Below, in pieces: positions 10,201 through 62,082 of a stretch of DNA of 64,000 nt. Within the stretch, counting starts at the first letter, position 1. Each line of letters opens with the position of its first letter. A model generated the notes under the pieces. The model saw only the letters and a program-made list of their open reading frames with translations, ran no database searches and was not told where the DNA came from. A program made the position numbers and the translations under genes. This DNA comes from Macrostomum lignano. Its lineage: Eukaryota. The stretch is from assembly GCA_002269645.1 (NCBI GenBank), contig NIVC01003149.1, forward strand, positions 1-64,000. The letters are read 5' to 3'.

Positions 10201-13200
10201 AGTCGATGGGATCTGGACCGTAGCCGCGCGGATCCAACAGCCTAGCCAGCCGGTGGCTTCGTTTGCAGTGCAGGCGCACTAAATGATAGGCGGTGTCCCA
10301 GCGTGCGCCGCCGTGCTCCGGATTTAACGGCGGCGGCGGTGCGCCGGGCTCCGGCGATTTGAAGGCCGATTTGTAGGCGCGCAATGCCGGGCCAAGACCG
10401 TCGCCGTAGGGTACGGAGAACCACAGGTAGAGAGTGAATGCTCGGGTCCAGTCCATGCCCTCTGGATTGGTTGTTTTGCATCAGAGGAGGTGAACTTTCG
10501 ATACATATCGGCATATTGTAATTCATACGACAATACTTAGAAATTTTGTCTAGGATTTTCTTAGAAACGCATATTTTTTAAACTTACTAATTAACAAATT
10601 ACTATTATTTTGATACATATCGGCAAATCCAAGAGTACATTTAATATTAACTTTAAATCTCTAGAAGTCTAGTACAAAATTAAACTGTATTTTCTATACA
10701 TATCGGTAGACTGAAATGATAGTAGAACAGTCAAACACTTTTATGAAACTTATATTGGCTTTTGATACATATCTGATGCTAACCTGATGGCATAAACTTA
10801 AAAATCAAAGTTGATTATATAAATACAATTTTCGATACATATCCGTAATTAATACTAATAGATATACCTGTCCCATTGACATCGCCAGCCAGGAGTCGAT
10901 AGAGTCGCCAAACAGCTGGCGGTATAAAATCTTTTGCTCCAGTCTGCTGCCAACAGGCCACCTGCTGGGCCACCAGGTCGCGTACAGATTCCGAGTGCGG
11001 CTGGCCCAACAGCAGCGCCAGTCGGTAGTGGCGCCGTTTTAGCGCTAAAGCGCACGCCTCAGTGAACTGACCGGCGCTTAACAAGCGAAACACAGCCACG
11101 GCGCAATCGCCCTCACTGTCGGGATCTTCAACAGTCTGTTGCTGTTGCTGCTGCTGCTGCTGAAGTTCGGCAACAACTGGCCTTCGCTGAACCCATTCTG
11201 TGAAAGCCTCTTTCCGAGGCAACTGAGTCGCTAAGAATTCGTCCTGCGGCAGATGCTGCTGCTGCTCACCACCAGCTGCATCAGAAGACGCAACCGTCGA
11301 GGATTTCAACGGAGCCCAGAGCGCTCGAGTGAGGCTGAGCAGGCGGGACAGGACACTGTCAGGCTGGGACTCCAGCTCGGCCAGGTACTGGGTCAGGGGT
11401 TCGAGTCCCGGCTCCGGAGACCATCTAGGGCATTGAAGAAGACTCTGCTGGCTGCCTCGGTCGGACACGGAGGTGTCGAGAGCAGCATTGAGCAGATTCT
11501 CTTCGTGTACGCTGGCCTCGCGACTCGACTCGGGAGCGAACACGCTGGTCAAGTGAATCTGCAAATTAATTTCAATATGCATTAAAAGACACTTAAATTC
11601 TAACAATACTACTTATTAATAAATCGCATTCAGTTGAGTTTTTTTAAATTTTCGCAAAAATTAGAAACTCCGATATGTATCGAAAATAAATATAATCAAC
11701 AACGCAAATCTTACAGACGTGACAAAATGTGCCAAGTATTATAGTTTAACAACCATAGTCACGATACTACTAAACTTCAATTCTGAGGAAAACATGTAGC
11801 GAAAAATACAAAATTCCAGTCAAAAAGAAAAAAATTGGCAGTAAATAATTTCGGAAAAATTGTTGACTCACTAGTTTCTGAGATGTGATCCATTCCGTTG
11901 TAGCTTCAAAACCCCGATATGTATCGAAAACAAATATACATAAAAACACTAATTCAACGAATCTCGAAACCCTGATTGTAAGCAATGCCATTGATACTAC
12001 TTTTGTACTTAGCATATGAATTAGTACTCGTACGAAAATATAGAACAAATCCGATATGTATCGACAGAACAACTATAGTAGTAACAAATTAACCAACTCT
12101 GGTCCTGATGACATTTCAACCGAATTACACTTAAATATACAAAACTGCTAATAATACTACTTATCTACTCTTATACGCACTGATACAAAAAAGATTTTTA
12201 TGAAAAAACTTTTCAAAAAAGGAGGAAATCCCCGATATGTATCGAAAGATACAAAACTCTAACTAAATGAAACCACAATTTTTATGTTTAATGTTTTCTT
12301 CCTTTCTACACATTAGTGTTTACTGAACCCGATATGTATCGAAAAACTATTATAACAATAAAAGTTTAATCAGTTTTGATCCGGATAACAGTTTTACCGA
12401 ATTACACTTAATTACACAAAAACGGCAAAAACGCTAATAATACTACTTATCTATTTTTTCGCGCCGATATAAAGCATAATTTAGATACAAAAAGCTAGTT
12501 GAAAAACGAATGCCAATATGTATCGAAAACAAATATATATATATCGAATACCAACCCTGGGTCCATCGATAGCTAGTAGCTCTCCAGACGGTCCCCAAGA
12601 GACGCGGCGAGACCTGCTACGCCAGAAGGCGACATCGGCCAGACTAAAATCGGCCGCGCATTGTCGCAAGTCGCCGCCGCCGCCACCGTAACCGGCAAAG
12701 CTGAGCTTCACAGATTCGGGAAACCTCAGCCGAGCAGCTGGCCTAGCCGGCATCGAGGACGGCACCGGAGACTCTGGGGCGAAGGCGAATTCCATTGGTT
12801 TCACTCGCAATGGCGATTGGGTTGGCAGGCCTGGACCAAGATGTTGCTGCTGCTGCTGCTGGCCAGTACGACGCAGCTTTGATGGTGATGGAGAGGTCGA
12901 TAGCAGGCCAGTCGGTGAGGCTAAGAACGACCGACGAGAGTCCACGTAAGACAGTTGCTGTTGGGAATACATTTATCTGTCTGCGGCATCAAGTCATGAG
13001 GAGCAGGTCATGAATTGCTGGGAAAAACTTTAATAAACCGTTATACATTAGTAATCTGACTTGTCAGGTCTACTAAATCTGACTTGTCAGGTGTATTAAA
13101 TCTGACTTGTCAGGTGTATTAAATCTGACTTGTCAGGTGTATTACATCTGACTTGTCAGGTTTATTAACTCTGACTTGTTAGGCCTATAAAATCTGACTT

Positions 13201-15988
13201 GTCAGGTCTAATAAATCTGACTTGTCAGATCTATTAAATCTGACTTGTCAGGTCTATTAAATCTGACTGTCAGGTCTATTAAATCTTACTTGTCAGGCCT
13301 ATTAAATCTGACTTGTCAGGTCTATAAGTCTGACTGTCAGGTCTATTAAATCTGACTTGTCAGGTGTAGTAAATCTAGCTTGTCAGGTCTATTAAATCTG
13401 AATTGTCAGGTCTATTAAATCTGACTTGTCAGGTCTATTAAATCTGACTTGTCAGGTGTATAAATCTGACTGTCAGGTCTAATAAATCTGACTGACAGGT
13501 CTATTAAATCTGACTGTCAGGTCTAATAAATCTGACTGACAGGTCTATTAAATCTGACTGTCAGGTCTAATAAATCTGACTGACAGGTCTATTAAATCTG
13601 ACTGTCAGGTCTAATAAATCTGACTGACAGGTCTATTAAATCTGACTGTCAGGTCTAATAAATCTGACTGACAGGTCTATTAAATCTGACTGTCAGGTCT
13701 AATAAATCTGACTGACAGGTCTATTAAATCTGACTGTCAGGTCTAATAAATCTGACTGACAGGTCTATTAAATCTGACTGTCAGGTCTAATAAATCTGAC
13801 TGACAGGTCTAGTAAATCTGACTTGTCAGGTGTATTAAATCTGACTGTCAGGTCTATTAAATCTGACTTGTCAAGTCTATTAAATCTGGCTTGTCAGGTC
13901 TATTAAATCTGACTTGTCAGGTGTATTAAATCTGACTTGTCAGGTCTATTAAATCTGACTTGTCAGGTGTATTAAATCTGACTTGTCAGGTCTATTAAAT
14001 CTGACTTGTCATGTGTATTAAATCTGACTTGTCAGGTCTATTAACTTTGACTTGTCAGGTCTATTAACTCTGACTTGTCAGGTCTATTAACTCTGCCTTG
14101 TCAGGTCTATTATCTTTGACTTGTCAGGTCTATTAAATCTGACTGTCAGGTGTATTAAACCTGACCTCAAAAAGCAAATTAGAAAACCAAAAAACACAGT
14201 CGAATTAAAACAACACCAATGATACACGATCGTATTCAGTTATAATATATTAATGGTTAATAATTAAGCTAAAAAGCATGATTAATAAAAGTATTGCAAT
14301 AAAAAACTTAACATAAAACACATAACTTACTACTATTAATAAATAAATAAGCCAACACAACATCAAAAGCAGCAACAATAGCAGGCAAAAAAGCAAACAT
14401 ATTTCAAGCAATTTAAGACAACATAATTATAAAATAATGGGTAAAAAAGCAAACGGTTAATACAAACCATTATTTCTGGCATTTCTAGCACCGATGACAA
14501 TATTGCAGTCTTTTAACAGTTAAATAAAAGTCATGGAATGCGGCCAGCTGCATTTACCAGATTGAATTTATATATTTTAATTATAAACATGTAGACTAGC
14601 AACTGTCAACGCAAATTAAATAGATTATAAATAGAGCTAAGTTTAATACCTACATGCAGTTGAAGCAAATTCAACCAATATCAAGTGATAAACGCAGTCA
14701 TTATTATATAAATACTAAAAGAAGAGAAAATGGACGCAAAAGAATGTGCGCTTGGGCTAATTGCAGAGCAAAACTGGGCACTAATGGACGGCTTAAAACT
14801 TCAAGCGACAGTCGGTGAGATCGATTTGAGAGTACAGAGTAGAGGCAGAGAAAAGAAAGGAAGAATAGAGATTAGAATTAACTATTCGCGTTAGGATAAG
14901 AGATGCGGGAGAAGAGAGGATGAGATTTGTAGATAAGATTAGGAGGATCAGATTTGCGAATAGGAGAGGGCGAGATTTGTGAATAGGAGGGTGAGATTTG
15001 TGAGTAGGAGGGTGAGATTTGTGAATAAGAGAGGGCGAGATTTTTGAATACATGTAGGTGAGATCTGTGGATAGGAGAGTGAGATTTGTAGATAGGAGGG
15101 TGAGATTTGTGGATAGGAGATGGTGAGATTTGTGGATAGGAGATGGTGAGATTTGAGGATAGGAGGGTGAGAGTTGTGGATGTGAGGGTGAGATTTGTGG
15201 ATGTGAGGGTGAGATTTGTGAACAGGAGAGGGTGAGACTTGTGGATAGGAGGGTGAGAGTTGTGGATAGGAGATGGTGAGATTTGTGGATAGGAGATAAT
15301 GAGACTTGTGGATAGGAGATCTTGAGATTCAAGACAGAGATAAGATCGAGATAAAAAATGATAAAAATAACGATTTTCAATCAATCAATCGTTGTTAATC
15401 CAGTCAGTCCAGTTATCTCAAGAGAGTATCTGAGTCGGATTTTCGCCAAGAGCCATGCTGCCCTTGAAGCCTAGCAGATCGGAGAGACGACACCAACTGC
15501 CTTTGCTGTTGCTGCTGTTGCAGTCTCGGCGGAGTCAGAGTGGCGGATTTCTCGCCGCCAAGAATATTACAATTATTTGGCGTCATAGTGGGCCGACGGC
15601 AAGTCACGGCCACTCTAGAAGTGGAGGCTGTACGCCACATCAACCTCTGGCACTGGCTGCCAGTGTTCAAAGACTCACAGGAGGATGATTGATTAATTTG
15701 ATCCTCGCAATTAAATAATTCAGTTTTCATGCTTTGCAAAGTGGCAGCGCTCAGGCCAAGTTGTTTTACTAAAGCAACTGAAGCTGGGTCGGATGAAGCT
15801 GATGAAGGCGGTTCCGGCTGAGGTGAATGCTGCTGAGGAGGCGGCGGCGGTGGCATGGGCGGCCCAATGGGGTAGAGGTGACCATTTTGCAGAACGCAAG
15901 GCAACACGAGGCCATTGGGAAGTGGATAAAAATAGTAGCGATAATGCGTGTTACTACCCGGATGTGACTGCTGCTGACAATGCTGCAT
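7268..15988 (-). CDS. NUP96: Nucleoporin Nup96. Exons 15988-15494 (donor uncertain), 12957-12556, 11558-10868, 10461-10032, 9231-8790, 7504-7268 (~898 aa)
   Basis: Conserved Nup96 motifs occur in order: LGLSAATLQSMKTELF, LADVAFWRSRSRRVSWGPSG, HYRLALLLGQ..RDLVAQQVACW, MDWTRAFTLYLWF, LCGYAAKLESQGLWDWALFVLLHI, DWQLGGQLYLDF, SLCSRV. Splice phases match across all introns. Confidence 0.88.
7617..8766. repeat. 35/38-bp minisatellite (cagtgactgaactaacatcagtgaccttgggattcatt) filling the last Nup96 intron
   Basis: Visible tandem units with variant forms; the unit contains the palindrome tcagt-g-actga. Confidence 0.95.
9331..9988. repeat. 20-bp minisatellite (caattagggatctgaatcct) in a Nup96 intron
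   Basis: Visible tandem units. Confidence 0.95.
10496..12530. repeat. Dispersed 17-bp motif ccgatatgtatcgaaaa: 5 copies on - (10496-10845) and 6 copies on + (11670-12530), flanking one Nup96 exon
   Basis: Minus-orientation copies (some degenerate) at 10496, 10608, 10694, 10760 and 10829. Plus-orientation copies at 11670, 11914, 12051, 12232, 12329 and 12513. Confidence 0.85.
13053..14166. repeat. 22/23-bp minisatellite (aaatctgacttgtcaggtctatt)
   Basis: Visible tandem units with an internal hairpin ctgac-tt-gtcag. Confidence 0.95.
14920..15330. repeat. Degenerate ~21-23-bp repeat (gagatttgtggataggagggt)
   Basis: Visible imperfect tandem units. Confidence 0.85.
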
Positions 15989-16033
15989 GCCGGATGTCTT
16001 TTAGTGCTGAAATATTTACGATTTTTTACGGTA

Positions 16034-16578
16034 AAGGATGTCAGGTACAATGGGATTAACTAGTTAAGGATCTGAGGTACAATGGGATTAACTACTTAAG
16101 AATCTGAGGTACAATGGGATTAACTAGTTAAGGATCTCGGGTACAATGGGATTAACTAGTTAAGGATCTCGGGTACAATGGGATTAACTACTCAAGGATC
16201 TCAGGTACAATGGGATTGACTAGTTAAGGATTTCGGGTACAATGGGATTTACTAGTTAAGGATTTCGGGTACAATGGGATTAACTAGTTAAGGATCTCGG
16301 GTAAAATGGGATTAACTAGTTAAGGATTTCGGATACAATGGATTAACTAGTTAAGGATCTGATTCTCGGGTACAATGTGATTAACTAGTTAAGGATGTCA
16401 GGTACAAAGGGATTAACTAGTTAAGGATGTCAGGTACAATGGGATTAACTAGTTAAGGATGTCAGGTACAATGGGATTAACTAGTTAAGGATGTCAGGTA
16501 CAATGGGATTAACTAGTTAAGGATGTCAGGTACAATGGGATTAACTAGTTAAGGATGTCAGGTACAATGGGATTAACC
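16034..16578. repeat. 32-bp minisatellite (ggtacaatgggattaactagttaaggatgtca) immediately upstream of the Nup96 first coding exon
   Basis: Visible tandem units containing the perfect palindrome ttaactagttaa. Confidence 0.95.
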
Positions 16579-17056
16579 AGATTAATAGAAGCAAAGAGTG
16601 AAAAGCAAACTCATTAGAGAACCGGGAGGACACAAAAGCCTGTACTTGTATTTAAAACAAATAATACATTCGAGTCGGTTCTTGTAATTTATAAAATGAA
16701 ACTTTTTTCTTATGCAGTTTAGCAAATCAGTAAATACCAGCACTAGGAGACAGGTGAAATTGAAACCTTTCGAAATTAACAAAATAAAAAAGAATGCGAT
16801 GACATAGGACTAAGTAAACATCAAACTTAAAATATGGTACTTTTTAAACACCGACAAAAAGGTATTTTAACGACAAATTTTACAGTACACATGAACTCAT
16901 GCCAAAAATTTGGGGGGGGATAAATAAAATATGAAAATTATAACAAAAAGAATATTTTCATTTCATTTAACTGAATAGGCGTGTCTATAATATTTTGAGA
17001 TAATTATATCAGGATAAAAGCATGCCTATTAAACCTTTATTTTGAAATATTATCTT

Positions 17057-19837
17057 CTGTTAGACAGCCAACTCTGAACACAGTGTCAACACCTGTTAGA
17101 CAGCCAACTCTGAACAGTGTCAACACCTGTTAGACAGCCAACTCTGAACACTGTCAACACCTGTTAGACAGTCAACTCTGAACACAGTGCGAACACCTGT
17201 TACAGTCTGAACACAGTGTCAACACCAGTTAGACAGTGATCTCTGAACACAGTGTCAACACCAGTTAGACAGTGATCTCTGAACACAGTGTCAACACCTG
17301 TTAAACAGTCAACTCTGAACACAGTGTCAACACCTGTTAAACAGTCATCTCTGAACACAGTGTCAACACCTGTTAGACAGTCAACTCTGAACACAGTGTC
17401 AACACCTGTTAGACAGTCAACTCTAATCACAGTGTCAACACCTGTTAGACAGCCAACTCTGAACACAGTGTCAACACCTGTTAGACAGTCATCTCTAAAC
17501 ACAGTGTCAACACCTGTTAGACAGTCAACTCTGAACACAGTGTCAACACCTGTTAGACAGTCAACTCTGAACAGTGTCAACACCAGTTAGACAGCCATCT
17601 CTGAACACAGTGTCAACACCTGTTAGACAGTCATCTCTGAACACAGTGTCGACACCTGTTAGACAGTCAACTCTGAACAGTGTCAACACCAGTTAGACAG
17701 CCATCTCTGAACACAGTGTCAACACCAGTTAGACAGTCATCTCTGAACACAGTGCTAACACCTGTTAGACAGTCATCTCTAAACACAGTGTCAACACCAG
17801 TTAGACAGTCATCTCTAAACACAGTGTCAACACCTGTTAGACAGTCAACTCTGAATACAGTGTCAACACCTGTTAGACAGTCATCTCTGAACACAGTGTC
17901 AACACCTGTTAGACAGTCAACTGTGAACACAGTGTCAACACCTGTTAGACAGTCATCTCTGAACACAGTGTCAACACCTGTTAGACAGTCAACTCTGAAC
18001 AGTGTCAACACCTGTTAGACAGTCAACTCTGAATACAGTGCCAACACCTGTTAGACAGTCAACTCTGAACACAGTGTCAACACCTGTTAGACAGTCAACT
18101 CTGAATACAGTGCCAACACCTGTTAGACAGTCAACTCTGAACACAGTGCCAACACCTGTTAGACAGTCAACTCTGAACACAGTGCTAACACCTGTTAGAC
18201 AGTCAACTCTGAACACAGTGCTAACACCTGTTAGACAGTCAACTCTGAACACAGTGCTAACACCTGTTAGACAGTCAACTCTGAACACAGTGTCAACACC
18301 TGTTAGACAGTCAACTATAAACACAGTGTCAACACCTGTTAGACAGTCAACTCTGAACAGTGTCAACACCTGTTAGACAGTCAACTATAAACACAGTGTC
18401 AACACCTGTTAGACAGTCAACTCTGAACAGTGTCAACACCTGTTAGACAGTCAACTCTGAACACAGTGTCAACACCTGTTAGACAGTCAACTCTGAACAC
18501 AGTGTCAACACCTGTTAGACAGTCAACTCTGAATACAGTGCCAACACCTGTTAGACAGTCAACTCTGAACACAGTGCCAACACCTGTTAGACAGTCAACT
18601 CTGAACACAGTGCTAACACCTGTTAGACAGTCAACTCTGAACACAGTGCTAACACCTGTTAGACAGTCAACTCTGAACACAGTGTCAACACCTGTTAGAC
18701 AGTCAACTGTGAACACAGTGTCAACACCTGTTAAACAGTCATCTCTGAACACAGTGTCAACACCTGTTAGACAGTCAACTCTGAACAGTGTCAACACCTG
18801 TTAGACAGTCAACTCTGAATACAGTGCCAACACCTGTTAGACAGTCAACTCTGAACACAGTGTCAACACCTGTTAGACAGTCAACTGTGAACACAGTGTC
18901 AACACCTGTTAGACAGTCATCTCTGAACACAGTGTCAACACCTGTTAGACAGTCAACTGTGAACACAGTGTCAACACCTGTTAGACAGTCATCTCTGAAC
19001 ACAGTGTCAACACCTGTTAGACAGTCAACTCTGAACAGTGTCAACACCTGTTAGACAGTCAACTCTGAATACAGTGCCAACACCTGTTAGACAGTCAACT
19101 CTGAACACAGTGTCAACACCTGTTAGACAGTCAACTCTGAACACAGTGTCAACACCTGTTAGACAGTCAACTCTGAATACAGTGCCAACACCTGTTAGAC
19201 AGTCAACTCTGAACACAGTGCCAACACCTGTTAGACAGTCAACTCTGAACACAGTGCTAACACCTGTTAGACAGTCAACTCTGAACACAGTGCTAACACC
19301 TGTTAGACAGTCAACTCTGAACACAGTGCTAACACCTGTTAGACAGTCAACTCTGAACACAGTGTCAACACCTGTTAGACAGTCAACTATAAACACAGTG
19401 TCAACACCTGTTAGACAGTCAACTCTGAACAGTGTCAACACCTGTTAGACAGTCAACTATAAACACAGTGTCAACACCTGTTAGACAGTCAACTCTGAAC
19501 AGTGTCAACACCTGTTAGACAGTCAACTCTGAACACAGTGCCAACACCTGTTAGACAGTCAACTCTGAACACAGTGTCAACACCTGTTAGACAGTCAACT
19601 CTGAATACAGTGCCAACACCTGTTAGACAGTCAACTCTGAACACAGTGCTAACACCTGTTAGACAGTCAACTCTGAACACAGTGCTAACACCTGTTAGAC
19701 AGTCAACTCTGAACACAGTGCTAACACCTGTTAGACAGTCAACTCTGAACACAGTGTCAACACCTGTTAGACAGTCAACTCTGAACACAGTGTCAACACC
19801 TGTTAGACAGTCAACTATAAACACACCTGTCTAACAG
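17057..19837. repeat. 36-bp (34-bp variant) minisatellite, ~2.8 kb (cacctgttagacagtcaactctgaacacagtgtcaa), between Nup98 and Nup96
   Basis: Contiguous units with no spacers and higher-order variant patterns. It produces the spurious STPVRQSTLNTV ORFs. Confidence 0.97.
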
Positions 19838-19949
19838 TCGATCCGACACGAAGAATCAAGCCCCTAAGAATGACATAAACTAGACAATATGTTCAGAAAC
19901 TGTAAGGCCAGAAATCCCGCAGTAAAACTGAAATCTCAAATCGCAAATC

Positions 19950-22900
19950 TCAGATCGCGCTGCTACTATCAGGCAGAGGCTGTCTGTGACTCTCGGTCGG
20001 TGCAGCAGTCAGAGCGGGACTGTTCTCAACTCCGCCAGATGCATTGGAGGCATTCAACGATTTAGACTTAGCAGCAGTGCCAACTGCAGCGGCTCCGATA
20101 GCTTTAGCCGAGGCCGAAGCAGCAATAGCGGAAGCAGACGCAGAGTCAAGAGACGCTCTCAAAGCAGACGAGGGCAGCGTGAGCTTCTTCCAATTGGATT
20201 TTCTAACAAAGAACAGACTGTCACTGCCAGACGGGTTGCTACTAGAAGAGAAACTAGCCCCCGCAGCATCCGAGGAAGCCTGTTCGAATCCTTCGAATAG
20301 TTGCTTCCTATTGGCCACTTGAAGCGGTCGGACAGTTGTTGACGAGCCAGATGAGCCACTGTTAGACTTGGGAGACACTCCGATGCTGAAATTGTAGTTA
20401 GCCTGACTGTTGCCAAGGGCGCGTTGGGCAGCCACTGGGAGCAGAAGATGTTGCTGCGAACTGACACCACCGCTAGACTGTTGAAGATTAAATGTTTGAC
20501 GAGATGCCGACGGCTGAGACAGGCTGAAATAGTTCAGAGGTGCACTCGAAGTCGAGGAGAATGGGCCGATGCCTGATCCCGCGGCTGAACCAGACGAAGA
20601 GGTCGACATTTGGCGAGTCAGGTGAGCGGTGCCGTATGGTAGGGTCTGGACTAAGTCGAGTACCTGCGGTCAAGTTTTAGAGACGAGGGAGATGGTTAAT
20701 TTAGATTATAATTGTGCTGAAACAACTGTTGAAAGATTGGGAAATGCTAGCAGCTAAGCATCTGATCTTAGCTCAGGAAGGATCAGGGAAGGTGTCAGTA
20801 AGTGTTATACCTGAGGATCAGGGAAGGTGTCAGTAAGTGTTATACCTGAGGATCAGGGAAGGTGTCAGTAACTGTGATACCTGAGGATCAGGGAAGGTGT
20901 CAGTAACAGTGATACCTGAGGATCAGGGAAGGTGTCAGTAACAGTGATACCTGAGGATCAGGGAAGGTGTCAGTAACAGTGATACCTGAGGATCAAGGAA
21001 GGTGTCAGTAACTGTGATACCTGAGGATCAAGGAAGGTGTCAGTAACTGTGATACCTGAGGATCAGGGAAGGTGTCAGTAACTGTGATATCTGAGGATCA
21101 GGGAAGGTGTCAATAACTGTGATACCTGAGGATCAGGGAAGGTGTCAGTAACTGTGATACCTGAGGATCAGGGAAGATGTCAGTAACTGTGATACCTGAG
21201 GATCAGGGAAGGTGTCAGTAACTGTGATACCTGAGGATCAGGGAAGGTGTCAGTAACTGTGATACCTGAGGATCAGGGAAGGTGTCAGTAACTGTGATAC
21301 CTGAGGATCAGGGAAGGTGTCAGTAACTGTGATACCTGAGGATCAGGGAAGGTGTCAGTAACTGTGATACCTGAGGATCAGGGAAGGTGTCAGTAACTGA
21401 TACCTGAGGATCAGGGAAGGTGTCAGTAACTGATACCTGAGGATCAGGGAAGGTGTCAGTAACTGTGATACCTAAGGATCAGGGAAGGTGTCAGTAACTG
21501 TGATACCTGAGGATCAGGGAAGGTGTCAGTAACTGTGATATCTGAGGATCAGGGAAGGTGTCAGTAACTGTGATACCTGAGGATCAGGGAAGGTGTCAGT
21601 AACTGATACCTGAGGATCAGGGAAGGTGTCAGTAACTGTGATACCTGAGGATCAGGGAAGGTGTCAGTAACTGTGATACCTGAGGATCAGGGAAGGTGTC
21701 AGTAACTGTGATACCTGAGGATCAGGGAAGGTGTCAGTAACTGTGATACCTGAGGATCAGGGAAGGTGTCAGTAACTGTGATACCTGAGGATCAGGGAAG
21801 GTGTCAGTAACTGTGATATCAGAGGATCAGTTAGTATTTAAGCCAGTCACCCTCACCTGCTGTTGCACCCTAGCCTGCTGCAACAGTGCCTCATCATGAT
21901 TAGCGCTTAATCCGATAGACTGCGGAGCAGCGGCTTGAGCTGTCTGTCCAGGCAGAGCATAGGACTGCTGATGCAACTGGAACGGCTGATTAGGCATCAT
22001 CAGTGACGAAGCATGTTGCTGACCAACTCCAGTTTGCAGGCCTGACTGAAACGGAGTCTGACCGAGCATCAAACCGCCCGTGGTGCCGCCGCCAAGAGCG
22101 GATGGTTGACCAGCTGAAGGCAAGCTGAAACCAAACGAGCCGCCAACTGAGGCTGCTGGAGCGCCGGCGGTGGCGCCGAAGGACAAGCCGGAGTTTGCTG
22201 TTGGCTGGGTTGCACCGAATAGCGGCTTCGCCTGAATTTTGAAATTCAGGTTAGAGAAATCATGTATAATCTTGGCGTTAGTCTATTGATAGTAGGATAG
22301 GGCACAGATACCAGAATAACTAGATGGGCCACTCAGCACATTTGCGTGTAAGCTACTATCAGTTCAGTAGTAAGCTAAACTGAAGCATTTTAATGTACTT
22401 TAAATTACAGACAAGGCCCAGCCCATTTATTGGCTCTTACCCCCCCCCCCAAGCTTGAACCCACAAACTCCACACAGAACCTCTAACCCAATTTTTATTA
22501 CCTTCCTCGGTTGTTACAGCCTAAAATCTGTCTTGTACATTTTAGTGGCTAATGTACATACATTACGGCTGAACCACTTAGCAAGCTTGTTTAGTTAGTC
22601 TAGTAGCTGTGAGATAGGGTTAGAGTTTTGGTTAAGGTATAGCATTAGTAATAGGTTAAGCATAGGATTTAGATTTGTATTAGGATTAAGAAGTTTAGAA
22701 TAAGGGTTTAGGTTAGGTTTAGGATAATGCTTTAGGTTAGGTTTAGGATAGGACTTTAGGTTAGGTTTAGGATAAGGCTTTAGGTTAGGTTTAGGATAGG
22801 GCTTTAGGTTAGGTTTAGGATAAGGCTTTAGGTTAGGTTTAGGATAGGGCTTTAGGTTACGTTTAGAATAAGGGTTTAGGTTAGGTTTATGTAGGATAAG

Positions 22901-25526
22901 GCTTTAGGTTAGGTTTAGGATAGGGCTTTAGGTTAGGTTTAGGATAAGGCTTTAGGTTAGGTTTAGGATAGGGCTTTAGGTTAGGTTTAGGATAAGGCTT
23001 TAGGTTAGGTTTAGGATAAGGCTTTAGGTTAGGTTTAGGATAAGGCTTTAGGTTAGGTTTAGGATAGGGCTTTAGGTTAGGTTGTTAGGTTTAGGATAGG
23101 GCTGTAGGTTAGGTTGTTAGGTTTAGGATAGGTTTAGGGGGTTTGGTTAGGTTTAGGATAAGGGTTAGGTTTAGTTTAGGCCTTTGACAATAGAATGAAT
23201 ATAGAGGAACAACAATAAGAATGATAAACCGGAACCACAGAAGTGAGGCACTAATAGCATCGCACAATAGAAACTCACCGCGCCGGCTCCAAAGCCGCCC
23301 GTAGCGCCGAAAAATCCGCCGCCGGCGCTTGACACCACAGTTCCAGCCGGCGCCGATGTTGCCGCCGACGGGGCGCCAAAAAACGACGTAGCGGCGCCGC
23401 CGGTAGCTGGCGTCGACCCGACCGAGGCGCCAAATGCGAACGGTTTCGTCGCATTAGCCGCGCCAGCAGAGTTGCCACCGCCAAACAAGCCGCCGCCAGT
23501 GGCGCCGGCGCTAAATCCAAACGCCGATCCTGTCGCAGTGGCGCCAGGCGCCGCCGCAGTAGATGTCGATATTCCGGCGCCGAAAGCAAACGGGCTTGGC
23601 TTGGCGCCGGCGTTAGCACCGGCGCCGCCGAAAAGTCCACCCGTGGTGGCGCCAGACGCGGCTCCGGCGCTTCCGCCAAACAGAGAAGTGGCGCCAGGCG
23701 CGGCGGCGCCAGCAACCGAAGCCGGCTGGCTAGCGGGGGCGCCGAACATAAATCCGGTAGGCTTGACGCCGCCAGCCGTAGCCGCGCCGGCGCCGCCGCC
23801 AAACAGACCACCGGCGCCGGCTGTAGAAGTGGCGCCGCCAGTGGACGCGCCGAATCCAAATAGGCTGCTGCCTGTTCCGGCGCCGCTAGCGGCTACGCTG
23901 CCGAAGGTTGGCACGCCAGCCGTGGCGGCGCCAAATGGCTTAGCAGCCGTTGAAGTGGCGCCGGCGCCGCCAAAGAGGCCGCCGCCGCCAGTTGTAGCGC
24001 CAGCAGAGGCGCCAGCGCCAAACAGGCCGCCGCCAGCTGCCGGAGGGGCGCCAGCACCCGCGCCGGTGGAGGCTCCGGCGCCAAACATGCCAACGCCGGC
24101 GCTGGAGGCGCCAGACTGCGGCGCGCGCCGACCAGCTTGATAATCTTCAAGGCGCAGCTCCTCCAGACTACCGGCTTGATACTCTTTCATGGCCGTGATC
24201 ACCATGTGCTTGGTGTTCACCGTCTGCTGGGCACCGCCCTTGGCCTGCAAGGTTATATGAGCGATTATTGATGCAATAATTGACTAGGATTAACTTCTGG
24301 CTGCATTTCAGTGATAAAAAGGCCTTTGTTTATTGTCATTTCCACCAAAATTGTAAATCATTGATACCGCATTCACGCTAATCCTAAACTGCTTTCTTAC
24401 TAATCCTAAACTGCATTCACACAAATCCTAAACCGCATTCACACCAATCCTAAACTGCTTTTTCACTAATCCTAAGTCACATTCACACCAATCCTAAACC
24501 TCATTCACACTAATCTTAAACTGCATTCACACTAATCCTAAGTCACATTCACACCAATCCTAAACTGCTTTTTCACTAATCCTAAGTCACTTTCACACTA
24601 ATCCTCAACCGCATACACACTAATCCTAAACCGCATTCACACTAATCCTAAACCGCATTCACACTAATCCTAAACCGCATTCACACTAATCCTCAACCGC
24701 ATTCACACTAATCTTTAACTGCATTCACACTAATCCTCAACCGCATTCACACTAATCCTCAACCGCATTCACACTAATCCTCAACCGCATTCACACTAAT
24801 CCTAAATTACATACACACTAATCCTAAACCGCATTCACACTAATCCTAAATCACATACACATTAATCATCAACCGCATTCACACTAATCCTAAACCGCAT
24901 TCACACTAATTCTAAATCACACACACTAATCCTAAACCGCATTCACACTAATTCTAAATCACACACACTAATCCTAAACCGCATTCACACTAATCCTCAA
25001 CCGCATTCACACTAATCCTCAACCGCATTCACACTAATCCTCAACCGCATTCACACTAATCAACAGCAGCAGTCACACAATCACAACAGAGCACAGTGAG
25101 CGGCATATACCTGAGTGGAGCTCTCAGTCCCTATTGGCGGATTAAAGGCCGGCCTGTTACCAGCCGACATGCCGCCAAGACCGCCAACTGTGGCGCCGCC
25201 GGCGGCGCCAAAACCACCAGAGGCGCCAAACAGGCCGGCGCCGCCACCGCCACCAGCAACTGTACCAGTTCCAACGCCGCCAAAGGCTGAACCAGTAGCA
25301 GCAGAAACACCAGCAGTTGGTTGCACACCCACACCAACTGTAGGCTGCTGCATCATGCCAAATGTACCAGTGGCACCAGTAGGCCGAGCAGCGGCGCCAA
25401 AAAGGCCAGTGGTGCCAGTTCCAGTGGCGCCAGCCGAAGGGCTGCCAAAAAGGCCGCCCCCAGTGCCAGCGGCTGGGGTTCCGACTGTTGGAGTTGTAGG
25501 TTTGCCAAATGGATTGCTGCCGAACA
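19950..25526 (-). CDS. NUP98: Nucleoporin Nup98 FG/GLFG region with GLEBS motif. Exons 25526-25111, 24244-23279, 22231-21857, 20663-19950, plus an upstream exon supplying the A of ATG (~823 aa). No autoproteolytic domain found
   Basis: The start reads (M)FGSNPFG, followed by many GGLFG repeats. The GLEBS motif is PPIGTE..TKHMVITAMKEYQAGSLEELRLEDYQAGRR. Linker motifs are QTLPYG, RKQLFEGF and FFVRKSNWKKLTL. The internal introns are phase-0 GT-AG. Confidence 0.9.
20776..21830. repeat. 35-bp minisatellite (cctgaggatcagggaaggtgtcagtaactgtgata) in a Nup98 intron
   Basis: Visible tandem units with the hairpin cctga-gga-tcagg. Confidence 0.95.
22690..23175. repeat. 24-bp TTAGG-rich minisatellite (ttaggtttaggataaggctttagg) in a Nup98 intron
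   Basis: Visible tandem units. Confidence 0.9.
24375..25062. repeat. 22-bp minisatellite (ccgcattcacactaatcctaaa) in a Nup98 intron
   Basis: Visible tandem units. Confidence 0.93.
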
Positions 25527-27844
25527 CTACAATTGGTTGTTTAGTTTTAGTTGTTTAAGTTAGTTTGCTTTGACAGTGTGTTGCAACTAAAGTTGTTAAT
25601 GACTACATTACCATAATCCTTTACGTGGCTTTTTAAGTGACTCATTTAGCCTAGATGATGAGCCTAAATAAGATGAGATTAAAAACGCCAAAGCTAGAAA
25701 CATTAAAGCTTTTAATAATATCTAATGTGGACATAAAATACCTATTTATTTTTTTATCACTAACAATAAGCTTACGGATTTAACCACTAACCCTATGGGT
25801 CAGAAAAGCTTATTTAAGGAAAACTTGTAAGCAAAAACATTTTAAACATATTTTTAAATTGGAATTTTCTTGCTTGGAAGACATTTTAAACTTTTTATTA
25901 AAATTTATTAGACTAGCTAGACCTTTTTAGATGCCAACTAATATAGTTTAGAATTTTACCTTTGGTATAGCATAGAAAATTTGATCATAGATGATAGTAG
26001 TAGCAAAACACTTTATTAACTATATAGCATAGCATACAAAAAAATTTCATGCCTATTCTCTTGCAAACTTGCATTAGAATGGCATACATGCGCAACCTAG
26101 TTTGAGATAAAAAATGCAACTTACTTATAAAAAAGCAAAGCAAAATAAATGTACTTTTTGATAAATGGCAGGAGTAACTATGACCATATTTTTAAGGCTA
26201 AATGCCTCACCAGGTAATTAGTCCTATATGCAGATTACTTGCGTCTTTATAACAGCTAATCAGTATGCAGTCTAAGTGGCAGCCTGTGAGGCAATTAAGT
26301 AAACTGTCTTAATACAATGTAGTGAGCATACTACATAAGTCATGATTCATGAATATTTAGAAGTAAAAGTGAAATGAATACAGTGTGATACAATTCACAA
26401 TGTATTCACCTATAGCTCAAGAATAATTCCATTTACTAGATGATTGAACATGGAATATGAGAACCCTGATTCAAATGGATCATTAGTTGCAGAATATGAA
26501 TCCAGTAGAGATACAAGCTATTAAAACCTGCAGATTTTCAATTTTTTAAAGCAAAACCCTAAATTCCAATTAATAGAACTATCTTTGCATTGCTTTTTTT
26601 AATTTGAAGTCATGCTCAAACAAAAACTTGTTAACAGTTAGGAAAAAGGCTAACAAAGATGGGAGCAAATACATGTTAAATTAAGATTTGAGGCTTTTGC
26701 AACTTTTCTCCTCTCTTCAACCTTTTTATCGCCTCCTATATTTATTTTCTTTCATCCCTCATACCTCCTCTCTCCTTTCCTTTCTCTTCTTTTAACATTC
26801 TTATCTCTCTTATCATCTCTCTCCAGTCTACTCTTTCATCTTGTCTCTCTTCTCTAATCTTTCCTTTTATCTCTTATCTATTTTCTCCTCTCCTTCTTTC
26901 TCTTGTCTCCTTTTTCCTCTCTCTTCTCTTTTCTGATCTCATCTATTATCTTTCTCATGAGAGAGATGAATCTCTCTCCTCACCTAGCTTTTCTCTTTTC
27001 TTTTATCTTTTCTCCGATTGCATTGCTTACCTCTGTTTGCTTATCTCTAATTGATTCTTTTATCCCCTCTGCTTTGAAGTAAGAAAGTTTGCCTACATTT
27101 TTGCTAAAGATAAGAGGAGAAAAGAGGGCATTGAGGAAAAAGGGTAGAGAGAAAAAGGGAAAAAGAAGGGAGGAGAAAAGAGGAGAGAAAAAAGGAGAGA
27201 AGAGAGGAGGAAAAAGGGAGAGAAAGAAAAGGGAAGGTTAGGAAGAGAGAGAGAAGAGAGTTAAAGAGACCAACCTAGAGAGAGAGAAGAGCCCTTCTAG
27301 GCCAGATAGAGGGGCTTTACAAGCTAGAGTTTGCCAACCCTTGCTTCAGAGTTTGAGAAATCAATGGGAAACTGTTGGGATAGGCTGTTGATTTTAAAGA
27401 TCTTGTCTGTAATTGAAGGCTTCTATTCTAGGTTTGCTCTCCTGCTATACTTGCATCTACTATCCTGATTGCCTCTAATTGCGACTTAGTTGCTCCTTTT
27501 ATGACTTTACCTAACTAATCATTTTGCAATTTATTTAATTATTTTGCAACTTACCTAATCATTTTTGTGACTTAGTTGCTCTTTTTGCAACTTATCTAAT
27601 CATTTGTACTGCTTAATTTGCTTTAGTTGCAACTTGTTTTTCTTTTGCTTTATTATTTTATTTCCCTACACTGCACTTTTTTCTTTTTTTCTTGCCTTTC
27701 TTTCCTTTTTTGTTTTTGGCATTTTTCATTTTTGGTTAACTCAACTTTGCAACTTACCCTAGTCCACTACAATTTATAGTGGCTAGATCGGCCATGTCTG
27801 CCAGCAGTTGCGCATGTATGGCGGAAGAAATATTAACATTAGTT

Positions 27845-59894: not shown

Positions 59895-62082
<2,188 letters not shown>

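What the first reader, a model, noticed from the sequence alone, without database searches (positions are those of the whole stretch)
15988..20663. Nup98-Nup96 locus apparently lacking the autoproteolytic domain: possible polyprotein fission into two tandem genes
Seen: the last Nup98 exon carries the pre-autoprotease linker motifs (RKQLFEGF, FFVRKSNWKKLTL), then runs to TGA at 19950-19952 with no consensus-strength donor. Between 19950 and 16007 I find only two minisatellites and AT-rich non-coding DNA, with no GYY.IPS, F.IGR..YG or HF/S-like sequence. The strong acceptor before the first Nup96 exon (atttcag, ending 16007) is followed by an in-frame TAA (16003-16001) and then ATG at 15988. The ORF from that ATG gives a full-size (~898 aa) Nup96. 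Established: animal Nup98-96 and yeast Nup145 are polyproteins self-cleaved by this domain at HF/S, and the domain also anchors Nup98 in the pore. Inference: protein-level cleavage may have been replaced by RNA-level separation (two genes, or a dicistron resolved by SL trans-splicing). Alternatively, an uncleaved fusion could form via weak splice sites. Either way Nup98 would need another pore anchor.
Basis: partly seen in the sequence, partly recalled or inferred. Interest (0 to 1): 0.85.

Follow-up and report, generated by a model that had tools for sequence, protein, structure and literature searches.

The report
Nup98-Nup96 locus without its autoprotease
In the flatworm Macrostomum lignano, the nuclear-pore gene that normally encodes one self-cutting Nup98-Nup96 precursor has lost the self-cutting domain in all three genomic copies and is annotated as separate tandem genes, an arrangement I found no report of in animals.

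Summary
The window is Macrostomum lignano contig NIVC01003149.1 (Mlig_3_7). On the minus strand, a GLEBS/FG Nup98 (823 aa) ends at TGA 19950-19952, just after the conserved linker motifs. Then come 3.9 kb of two minisatellites plus 622 bp of unique DNA, a TTTCAG acceptor, an in-frame TAA and ATG 15988. That ATG opens a 191-aa ORF carrying the conserved Nup96 N-terminal motif. Five exons of a 738-aa Nup96 follow.

A profile of 87 autoprotease (peptidase S59) domains finds nothing in any frame of the window or of two other genomic copies. It scores E 4.5e-67 on a canonical locus from an unnamed animal. One M. lignano copy has only 3.7 units of the 36-bp repeat, so assembly collapse is excluded. 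The copies evolve under purifying selection (dN/dS about 0.17). GenBank's RNA-seq-derived annotation lists separate CDSs.

Best reading: the autoprotease exon was lost and the gene split into tandem, probably co-transcribed genes. Separation by polyadenylation and SL trans-splicing is inferred, not shown.

Untested: whether an S59 domain survives elsewhere in the genome, and whether the 191-aa exon is spliced onto Nup96.

The parts
25111..25527 (-). Nup98 exon with the N-terminal FG repeats (MFGSNPFGK...). The start codon is probably split (A|TG) by an upstream intron.
   Evidence: ORF. The exon model sums to 823 aa, the annotated product length. Exact identity to the GenBank protein was not confirmed.
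23279..24244 (-). Nup98 exon with the GLEBS (Rae1/Gle2-binding) motif at 24140-24244, followed by GLFG/FG repeats.
   Evidence: PF21240 Nup98_GLEBS, E 9.8e-17, residues 140-174. Junctions.
21857..22231 (-). Nup98 exon with the last FG repeats, ending ...ALLQQARVQQQ. Donor is CAG|gtgagg.
   Evidence: Colinear with L005 ORF1.
19953..20663 (-). Last Nup98 exon (237 aa): unstructured linker with conserved motifs RKQLFEGF (20286-20309) and FFVRKSNWKKLTL (20175-20213).
   Evidence: Colinear BLASTP alignment to a canonical Nup98 up to ...LRTSLDS. The motifs align to 'kksLFdgledd' and 'prksvKkLvIkp' of a 74-sequence pre-APD profile, with weak statistics (E 0.02-0.3).
19950..19952 (-). TGA stop that ends Nup98 where the autoproteolytic domain would begin.
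   Evidence: It is the annotated CDS end. Identical in L003 and L004.
19826..19949 (-). Unique sequence after the stop; candidate start of the 3'UTR.
   Evidence: 97.6-100% identical among the three copies. It holds no canonical poly(A) hexamer.
17057..19825 (.). 36-bp minisatellite, 77.7 copies in the window (16.7 in L004, 3.7 in L003).
16586..17056 (-). AT-rich unique spacer. AATAAA lies at 17036-17041 as a candidate poly(A) signal. A promoter for the downstream gene here is not excluded.
   Evidence: 96-99% identical among copies. The AATAAA sits at a different offset in L003/L004. No Pfam or APD signal.
16034..16585 (.). 32-bp minisatellite, 17 copies in the window (38 in L004, 21 in L003).
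16001..16012 (-). Orphan 3' splice acceptor TTTCAG (G at 16007), followed by CAC and the in-frame TAA (16001-16003). Candidate SL trans-splice site.
   Evidence: Identical in all three copies. It fits the M. lignano trans-splice acceptor motif [T/C]TNCAG (PMC8629364).
15413..15988 (-). 191-aa ORF (ATG 15986-15988, TAA 15413-15415), annotated as its own gene. Residues 65-103 (15680-15796) carry the conserved Nup96 N-terminal motif QLGLSAATLQSMKTELFNCEDQ.
   Evidence: A Nup96 N-terminal profile (87 sequences) hits it at E 2e-6, profile positions 76-112 of 276. The ORF is intact, and the only length difference is one in-frame codon, in all copies. No Pfam family.
15673..15678 (-). Candidate cis donor T|GTGAGT (phase 1). 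It could join the 191-aa exon to acceptor ttcttag| at 12921, giving an 824-aa Nup96.
   Evidence: Donor score is 5/7 on the scale, counted by hand. The join is in frame and colinear with the profile. GenBank does not use it.
12973..15412 (-). Spacer or intron between the 191-aa ORF and the 738-aa Nup96 CDS. It holds 21-23-bp (14940-15329) and 23-bp (13053-14165) minisatellites.
12556..12972 (-). Nup96 CDS exon 1 of the GenBank model (MYSQQQ...AIDGPR), including ...RRVSWGPSGELL.
   Evidence: Exon walk reproduces P0001 exactly. Profile positions 117-210.
10868..11558 (-). Nup96 CDS exon 2.
10032..10461 (-). Nup96 CDS exon 3 (core of PF12110).
   Evidence: PF12110, E 6.5e-66, on P0001.
8790..9231 (-). 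Nup96 CDS exon 4.
7268..7504 (-). Nup96 CDS exon 5 with its stop (7268-7270).

Best explanation
This is the Nup98-Nup96 locus of the flatworm Macrostomum lignano. It has lost the exon(s) for the autoproteolytic peptidase-S59 domain, together with about the first 75 residues of Nup96.

Shown:
- The Nup98 part keeps the FG repeats, the GLEBS motif and the linker motifs. It reads into a stop codon at the point where the protease domain should start.
- The Nup96 part restarts 3.9 kb downstream at its own ATG. That ATG lies 18 nt after an acceptor with no matching upstream donor, with an in-frame TAA in between.
- All three genomic copies are built the same way and are under purifying selection.

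Inferred:
- The two nucleoporins are no longer made as one self-cleaving precursor. They are translated from separate mature mRNAs.
- The pair is most likely still transcribed from the Nup98 promoter. The pre-mRNA would be polyadenylated after the 36-bp minisatellite and SL trans-spliced at the orphan TTTCAG acceptor. By the rule cited in PMC8629364, an acceptor without a cis donor becomes a trans-splice site by default.
- Protein-level cleavage would thus have been replaced by RNA-level cleavage, with co-expression preserved.
- Without the S59 fold, Nup98 cannot bind the Nup88 propeller or the Nup96 N-terminus in the canonical way. It would be held in the pore by its retained linker motifs, whose vertebrate and fungal counterparts R1-R3 bind Nup205, Nup188 and Nup155. 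This holds unless another S59-bearing paralogue exists elsewhere in the genome.
For: Identity:
- Nup96 exons are 99% identical to M. lignano PAA53029.1. The window is NIVC01003149.1 positions 1-64000.
- The Nup98 part has GLEBS (PF21240, E 1e-16) and no PF04096. The Nup96 part has PF12110 (E 6.5e-66).

Absence of the domain:
- An 87-sequence APD profile run with hmmsearch --max against six-frame ORFs of the window, L003 and L004 gives a best E of 5.7. The canonical locus L005 scores 4.5e-67.
- Pfam on the unique spacer frames is negative. tblastn is negative.
- Among the top Nup96 relatives, every protein of at least 1200 aa has the domain, and 86 of 86 full segments keep H[FY][ST].

What is missing:
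- M. lignano Nup98 aligns colinearly to L005 ORF1 up to ...LRTSLDS (E 8e-78). Nup96 aligns to L005 ORF3 (E 1e-92). L005 has a 237-aa S59 ORF between them.
- The 191-aa ORF matches Nup96 N-terminal profile positions 76-112, and the next exon matches 117-210. Positions 1-75 are unmatched.

Not an artefact and not a dead copy:
- L003 and L004 have the same stop, spacer, acceptor, TAA and ATG. Their 36-bp arrays have 3.7 and 16.7 copies, against 77.7 in the window.
- dN/dS between copies is 0.17.
- Only one Nup96 cluster was recovered for the species.

Separate mRNAs:
- GenBank lists CDSs of 823, 191 and 738 aa. That annotation cuts transcripts at experimentally mapped SL and poly(A) sites (PMC5730564).
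- The acceptor fits [T/C]TNCAG, and the repeat-adjusted intergenic distance is 622 bp. The species' operon criterion is under 1 kb.
- No GT in the last exon scores above 3/7.

Anchoring: the APD binds the Nup88/Nup82 propeller, and linker regions R1-R3 bind the inner ring.
Against: - I saw no RNA reads. The SL site, the poly(A) site and co-transcription are all inferred.
- The SL ends in AUG. Spliced at 16007 it would create a two-codon uORF (AUG CAC UAA) ahead of the real start.
- AATAAA after the 36-bp array is not positionally conserved among the copies.
- The raw intergenic distance is 3.9 kb. An independent promoter in the AT-rich spacer is equally compatible.
- Donors used in this locus can be weak (4/7), so a rare read-through splice from a 3/7 site cannot be excluded.
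- Genome-wide absence of S59 is untested. The only proteome-wide search returned short proteins only and is not exhaustive.
- My 823-aa reconstruction matches the annotated length, but its exact sequence was not found in the collection.
Confidence: 0.7

Rival explanations
1. Assembly artefact: an exon encoding the autoprotease lies inside a collapsed or mis-joined minisatellite and is missing only from the assembly.
For: Mlig_3_7 is a difficult, repeat-rich PacBio/Canu assembly (PMC5730564). The gap region in the window is 84% minisatellite.
Against: Three separately assembled contigs share the same junctions. In L003 the 36-bp array is only 134 bp (3.7 copies) and in L004 589 bp, leaving no room for a hidden 450-bp exon. 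The unique flanks are colinear and 96-100% identical. The window has no N. The stop codon and the downstream ATG/TAA are themselves incompatible with a continuous ORF.
Confidence: 0.03
2. [quoted passage not shown]
For: TbNup158 shows that an uncleaved Nup98-96 can work (PMC4758718). Phase-compatible pairs exist on paper, for example GT at 20318 (3/7) with acceptor cctcctcag| at 15832. Real donors in this locus can be as weak as 4/7.
Against: All phase-0 candidate donors lie upstream of the conserved linker motifs and would delete them. The strong acceptor at 16007 leads into an in-frame TAA. The RNA-seq-derived annotation ends the CDS at TGA 19950 and starts new CDSs downstream.
Confidence: 0.07
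3. Decaying duplicate: these copies are degenerating paralogues, and an intact Nup98-APD-Nup96 gene elsewhere does the work.
For: The DV1 line carries large duplicated chromosome segments (PMC5730564). I could not scan the whole genome.
Against: All three copies keep every ORF intact, with dN/dS 0.17 overall and 0.04-0.12 for Nup96. A Nup96 query against 5.8 billion proteins, including the M. lignano proteome, returned only this cluster. Its 90% cluster holds only these copies. In the exhaustive search the next relative is only 37% identical. The models derive from expressed transcripts.
Confidence: 0.08
4. Fission with the autoprotease fold kept elsewhere: the locus is split as described, but M. 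lignano retains an S59 domain in another gene (a second Nup98-like paralogue as in yeast Nup100/Nup116, or a stand-alone domain). Pore anchoring would then be conventional.
For: Paralogues carrying a non-cleaving S59 fold are common in fungi (my own knowledge). Plants have duplicated Nup98 genes separate from Nup96 (PMC8685260). The domain is retained even in Entamoeba and in the flatworm Protopolystoma. My proteome-wide search was not exhaustive.
Against: No M. lignano protein was among the 90 S59 hits, which did include short stand-alone ORFs from many assemblies. No S59 signal was found in 64 kb plus 47 kb of the three loci.
Confidence: 0.3

Closest known systems
Human NUP98-NUP96, yeast Nup145 and C. 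elegans npp-10 self-cleaving precursors (peptidase S59)
   Same: Same gene order and orthologous parts: N-terminal FG/GLFG repeats, GLEBS, the linker motifs, the Nup96 N-terminal 'LQxMK' motif and the Nup96 alpha-solenoid.
   Different: The S59 autoproteolytic domain, the HF/S site and the first ~75 residues of Nup96 are absent. The reading frame is interrupted by TGA and restarts at a new ATG.
Canonical locus on ENA ERZ25070786 contig ctg130276l (L005, unnamed animal): the best-scoring Nup96 relative
   Same: Colinear Nup98 (E 8e-78) and Nup96 (E 1e-92). The linker exon ends about 70-85 residues after the ...SLDS motif in both.
   Different: L005 has a 237-aa S59 ORF (VRHF|SRY) between the two parts. 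It is not a specially close relative: its own best hit is a sea-star protein.
Land-plant Nup98a/b and Nup96, encoded by separate genes
   Same: Nup98 and Nup96 are produced from separate genes rather than a polyprotein (PMC8685260).
   Different: The plant genes are usually on different chromosomes, and plant Nup98 binds Nup88/MOS7. By my own knowledge plant Nup98 keeps the C-terminal S59 fold. Here the genes remain in tandem on one strand and the fold is gone.
Trypanosoma brucei Nup158
   Same: A lineage that abandoned autoproteolytic processing of Nup98-96 (PMC4758718; PMC8421043).
   Different: TbNup158 stays a single uncleaved polypeptide that lacks only the catalytic residues. Here the ORF is broken and the whole domain is missing.
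M. lignano SL trans-spliced operons
   Same: Same-strand neighbours, a downstream acceptor fitting [T/C]TNCAG, and a repeat-adjusted spacer of 622 bp (under 1 kb), with minisatellites inflating the spacer as described for this species (PMC8629364).
   Different: SL reads at this acceptor were not available to me. The typical operon spacer is about 100 bp.

Membership tests
Nup98-Nup96 / Nup145 autoprocessing polyprotein | N-terminal FG/GLFG repeats with a GLEBS (Rae1/Gle2-binding) motif | tested here: met
   PF21240, E 9.8e-17, at residues 140-174. GLFG-type repeats are visible in the ORFs.
Nup98-Nup96 / Nup145 autoprocessing polyprotein | Peptidase S59 (PF04096 Nucleoporin2) domain with an HF[S/T] cleavage site between the two parts | tested here: not met
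   No hit in any frame of the window, L003 or L004 (best E 5.7, against 4.5e-67 for the control). Pfam and tblastn are negative.
Nup98-Nup96 / Nup145 autoprocessing polyprotein | One continuous reading frame from Nup98 into Nup96 | tested here: not met
   TGA at 19950-19952, in-frame TAA at 16001-16003, a new ATG at 15988, and no donor above 3/7 in the last exon. GenBank lists separate CDSs.
Nup98-Nup96 / Nup145 autoprocessing polyprotein | C-terminal Nup96 domain (PF12110) | tested here: met
   PF12110, E 6.5e-66, on P0001.
Split Nup98 / Nup96 genes of the land-plant type | Nup98 and Nup96 encoded by separate genes | tested here: inconclusive
   Separate ORFs and separate annotated CDSs. No transcript evidence was seen directly.
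Split Nup98 / Nup96 genes of the land-plant type | Nup98 retains its C-terminal S59 fold (binds Nup88) | tested here: not met
   The 823-aa Nup98 ends 71 residues after the linker motif, with no PF04096.
M. lignano SL trans-spliced operon (criteria of PMC8629364) | Adjacent same-strand genes with a repeat-adjusted intergenic distance under 1 kb | tested here: met
   3943 nt raw, 622 nt after removing the two arrays.
M. lignano SL trans-spliced operon (criteria of PMC8629364) | Downstream gene carries the SL (SL-containing reads map to its 5' acceptor) | not testable with these tools
   Only the motif could be checked: TTTCAG fits [T/C]TNCAG and is identical in three copies.
Uncleaved Nup98-96 fusion (TbNup158 type) | Single polypeptide with FG repeats fused to the Nup96 alpha-solenoid | tested here: not met
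   The stop codon and frame break are as above. No annotated fused model exists.

The most novel reading that the evidence does not exclude
Macrostomum lignano has no peptidase-S59 nucleoporin domain anywhere in its genome. An animal would then have replaced the ancient protein-level self-cleavage of Nup98-Nup96 by RNA-level cleavage of a dicistronic pre-mRNA (polyadenylation plus SL trans-splicing). It would build functional pores with a Nup98 anchored only through its short linker motifs, without the Nup88/Nup96-binding fold that current pore models treat as its anchor to the cytoplasmic filaments.
Probability: 0.35. Interest if true: 0.75.

Novelty: new variant of a known kind. Interest (0 to 1): 0.55.

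Why it matters
The S59 autoproteolytic fold does two jobs in current pore models. It processes Nup98-Nup96, and it docks Nup98 (and through it Rae1) on Nup88/Nup82 and on Nup96. It is kept from yeast to humans, and even in Entamoeba.

A viable animal lineage whose only recognisable Nup98-Nup96 locus lacks the fold would be a natural experiment. It asks how far the linker motifs alone can position Nup98.

It would also be a clean example of gene fission made possible by SL trans-splicing. Losing an internal exon and its donor leaves an orphan acceptor, and that acceptor can then define a new gene.

M. lignano has transgenesis, so Nup98 localisation and complementation with an APD-bearing version can be tested directly.

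If an S59 paralogue turns up elsewhere in the genome, the finding shrinks to an animal counterpart of the plant-type gene split.

Tried and rejected
- Pfam on raw DNA references failed because of stop codons. I re-ran it with X-masked frames.
- A protein search with the last Nup98 exon plus the 191-aa ORF returned nothing, because low-complexity words swamped the candidate list. That search was wasted.
- The APD-profile search of the 5.8-billion-protein collection returned only proteins of 291 aa or less and missed all full-length Nup98-96. It therefore cannot support genome-wide absence. One NCBI hit I followed (P0170) comes from another assembly, GCA_013332595.1.
- I took L005 at first for a close relative. 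Reciprocal scoring shows it is no closer to M. lignano than a sea star is, so it serves only as a canonical comparator.
- My 823-aa Nup98 reconstruction was not found by exact look-up and could not be submitted to the contig look-up.
- The last-exon peptide has no match among PDB sequences. I therefore could not assign its motifs to the solved R1-R3 linker complexes.
- The pre-APD linker profile alone gives only E 0.02-0.3 on the last exon.
- AATAAA after the 36-bp array looked like a conserved poly(A) signal but sits at different offsets in the copies.
- No paper mentioning both Macrostomum and Nup98 exists in the searchable library.
Full report
WHAT THE WINDOW IS

The window has no N and is eukaryotic. 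A rough concatenation of the Nup96-like ORFs on the minus strand matched, at 99% identity, 'hypothetical protein BOX15_Mlig024537g1 [Macrostomum lignano]' (P0001, 738 aa, PF12110). Contig look-ups place the window at positions 1-64000 of NIVC01003149.1, in assembly Mlig_3_7 (GCA_002269645.1). They show three annotated CDSs on this strand:
- an 823-aa product ending at 19950;
- a 191-aa product at 15413-15988;
- the 738-aa Nup96 at 12972-7268.

M. lignano is a free-living flatworm with documented SL trans-splicing and operons (PMC8629364).

CHECKING THE OBSERVATION

The last Nup98 exon (20663-19953) encodes ...RKQLFEGF...FFVRKSNWKKLTL... and ends at TGA 19950-19952.

Between 19949 and 16007 lie four segments:
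- 124 nt of unique sequence;
- a 36-bp minisatellite (17057-19825, 77.7 copies);
- a 471-bp AT-rich unique spacer;
- a 32-bp minisatellite (16034-16585).

Then comes aaatatttcag|CAC TAA AAG ACA TCC GGC ATG.

None of the 39 GT dinucleotides in the last exon scores above 3/7 on a simple donor consensus. Donors actually used in the two genes score 4-6/7. 'No consensus-strength donor' is therefore correct, but the margin is modest.

The one point I could not reproduce is the '~898 aa' Nup96. The ORF opened by ATG 15988 is 191 aa long and has its own stop at 15413-15415.

IS THE AUTOPROTEASE REALLY ABSENT?

Three searches say yes:
- tblastn with the human domain (written from memory, so only a lead) finds nothing below E = 1 in the window.
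- Pfam on the X-masked frames of the non-repeat spacer, on the last Nup98 exon and on the 191-aa ORF finds no PF04096.
- The strongest test used my own profile. I took the full APD segments from the Nup98-96 proteins recovered by an exhaustive HMMER search with P0001 and added the L005 domain, 87 sequences in all. I built a profile from them and ran it with all filters off against every stop-to-stop ORF of at least 8 aa in six frames of the window and of three other loci. The canonical control locus scored E 4.5e-67. The best M. lignano 'hit' had E 5.7.

In the same relatives, every protein of at least 1200 aa has the domain, and 86 of 86 full segments keep H[FY][ST].

NOT AN ASSEMBLY ARTEFACT AND NOT A DEAD COPY

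The 90%-identity clusters of P0001 and of the 191-aa protein revealed two further genomic copies. I fetched them as L003 (NIVC01000034.1) and L004 (NIVC01002134.1).

Both show the same order: last exon ...PLPDSSSAI*, 36-bp array, AT-rich spacer, 32-bp array, acceptor-TAA-ATG, 190-aa ORF, Nup96. The 36-bp array has only 3.7 copies (134 bp) in L003 and 16.7 copies in L004. L003 also carries a retroelement fragment inserted upstream of the acceptor.

Identity between copies:
- unique segments: 96-100%;
- the 66 nt around the acceptor and ATG: identical.

A hidden exon in a collapsed array is therefore excluded.

Between copies, synonymous differences outnumber non-synonymous ones. Overall dN/dS is 0.17, with 0.19-0.25 for Nup98 and 0.04-0.12 for Nup96. 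The counts for the 191-aa ORF are too small to judge.

No other Nup96 cluster was recovered for the species. The next relative in the exhaustive search is only 37% identical.

The GenBank models derive from RNA-seq transcripts cut at experimentally mapped SL and poly(A) sites (PMC5730564). The pieces are therefore expressed.

WHAT EXACTLY IS MISSING

The best-scoring Nup96 relative (P0007) sits on an ENA contig (L005) from an unnamed animal. That contig carries three ORFs in a row:
- an FG/GLEBS ORF;
- a 237-aa S59 ORF (...WVFEVRHF|SRYRFEDSDEDD; PF04096, E 6.5e-44);
- a Nup96 ORF.

My exon model for M. lignano Nup98 sums to 823 aa, the annotated length. Its exons are 25527-25111, 24244-23279, 22231-21857 and 20663-19953. 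Exact identity to the GenBank protein could not be verified.

This protein aligns colinearly with L005 ORF1 from residue 3 to 762. The alignment runs through ARVQQQVL.LV...PYG...LF.....E and FFVR...WK.L..P.S.LR.SLDS, with E 8e-78. It carries GLEBS. M. lignano Nup96 aligns with L005 ORF3 at E 1e-92.

A profile of the first 260 post-cleavage residues of Nup96 from 87 relatives gives these matches:
- the 191-aa ORF in all three copies, E 2-6e-6, profile positions 76-112, motif 'elglsshkvqlMKasfFadeded' against QLGLSAATLQSMKTELFNCEDQ;
- the next exon, at positions 117-210;
- nothing at positions 1-75.

The missing piece is thus the S59 domain plus the acidic N-terminal segment of Nup96. In L005 this is essentially one exon.

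L005 is only a comparator. Its own best hit is a sea-star protein, not M. lignano.

The flatworm Protopolystoma keeps the domain. The loss is therefore not shared by all flatworms.

HOW IT PROBABLY WORKS

Shown: two (or three) separate ORFs in tandem, a terminated Nup98, an orphan acceptor, and separate annotated CDSs.

Inferred: separate mature mRNAs.

The acceptor TTTCAG fits the species' trans-splice motif [T/C]TNCAG. The same paper cites the rule that an acceptor without a cis donor upstream is trans-spliced by default. It also notes that repeats inflate operon spacers, and it defines operons by a repeat-adjusted distance under 1 kb. Here that distance is 622 bp.

This suggests a simple path. 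Loss of the S59 exon and of the upstream donor left read-through into a stop codon on one side and an orphan acceptor on the other. SL trans-splicing then turned the acceptor into the 5' end of a new gene.

Weak points:
- no reads were seen;
- the SL's terminal AUG would form a two-codon uORF at this site;
- the AATAAA after the 36-bp array is not positionally conserved;
- a promoter in the AT-rich spacer is not excluded.

IS THE 191-aa ORF A SEPARATE PRODUCT OR THE FIRST CODING EXON OF Nup96?

This is open. GenBank keeps them apart. However, an in-frame consensus donor (T|GTGAGT at 15678) and the acceptor ttcttag| at 12921 would give an 824-aa Nup96 that is colinear with the profile. The authors themselves note that RNA-seq transcription units tend to break in repeat-rich stretches.

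CONSEQUENCES FOR THE PORE

In current models the APD docks Nup98 on the Nup88/Nup82 propeller and thereby recruits Rae1/Gle2. Linker regions R1-R3 bind Nup205, Nup188 and Nup155.

M. lignano Nup98 keeps GLEBS and at least two conserved linker motifs. I could not map those motifs onto R1-R3, because there was no PDB sequence hit.

Either the linkers suffice, or another S59-bearing protein exists. I could not test the second possibility. The only proteome-wide APD search returned 90 short proteins, none from M. lignano, and it missed all full-length Nup98-96, so it is not exhaustive.

COMPARISON WITH WHAT IS KNOWN

- Separate Nup98 and Nup96 genes are known in land plants, usually on different chromosomes (PMC8685260). 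By my own knowledge, plant Nup98 retains the S59 fold.
- Abandonment of cleavage is known in trypanosomes, where Nup158 stays fused (PMC4758718; PMC8421043).
- Even Entamoeba retains the S59 domain.
- I found no report of an animal Nup98-Nup96 locus without the domain, and no paper linking Macrostomum and Nup98.

I therefore rate this a new variant of a known kind. The locus-level facts are solid. The RNA mechanism and the genome-wide loss remain to be shown.

Noticed in passing
window 13053-14165, 14940-15329, 16034-16585, 17057-19825, 20779-21830, 22693-23083, 24366-25061; L003 and L004 equivalents: Every intron or spacer of the locus carries its own, unrelated minisatellite (periods 21-36 bp). 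Copy numbers differ widely between the three 96-99% identical genomic copies: the 36-bp array has 78, 16.7 and 3.7 copies, and the 32-bp array has 17, 38 and 21.
   Followed up: partly
L003 5265-6818: One copy has a retroelement fragment (517-aa ORF with an RNase H domain) inserted between the 32-bp array and the acceptor/ATG of the 191-aa ORF. The 66 nt around the acceptor remain identical to the other copies.
   Followed up: partly
window 49269-53193 (+): Ty3/gypsy-type retrotransposon: a gag-like ORF and a 955-aa pol ORF with aspartyl protease, RT, RNase H and integrase domains. The pol ORF is open over its full length.
   Followed up: partly
window 30459-37985 (+) and ~55692-56050 (-): A multi-exon gene with an armadillo-repeat region and a protein kinase domain (NEK10-like by eye). 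A diverged inverted copy of one of its kinase exons lies about 20 kb away, probably a pseudogene fragment.
   Followed up: partly
window ~60400-60816 (+), flanked by 59913-60350 and 60843-61426: An ORF with an LRAT/PLAAT-family domain (PF04970, E 2e-19) sits between two long tetranucleotide-type microsatellites that stay open in several frames.
   Followed up: partly
window 3700-4098 and 4682-5335 (+): Glycine-rich ORFs (poly-G runs, GGxGG repeats) with no Pfam match. They may be exons of a secreted or extracellular glycine-rich protein.
   Followed up: no
window 12955-12972 (-): The acceptor cccaacag| (AG at 12958-12959) is followed by CAA CTG TCT..., in frame with the 738-aa Nup96 ORF. The M. 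lignano spliced leader ends in ATG, so trans-splicing here would supply an in-frame start (M-Q-L-S-Y-V-D...). The GenBank model of copy L004 is flagged 5'-partial and starts two codons after the genomic ATG.
   Followed up: no
window 25526-25614 (-) and upstream of 25988: The annotated 823-aa Nup98 CDS starts upstream of position 25988, yet exons from 25526 downward already account for 823 aa minus one nucleotide. This implies a start codon split A|TG by a 5' intron. My reconstruction was not found by exact look-up, so one junction may differ.
   Followed up: partly
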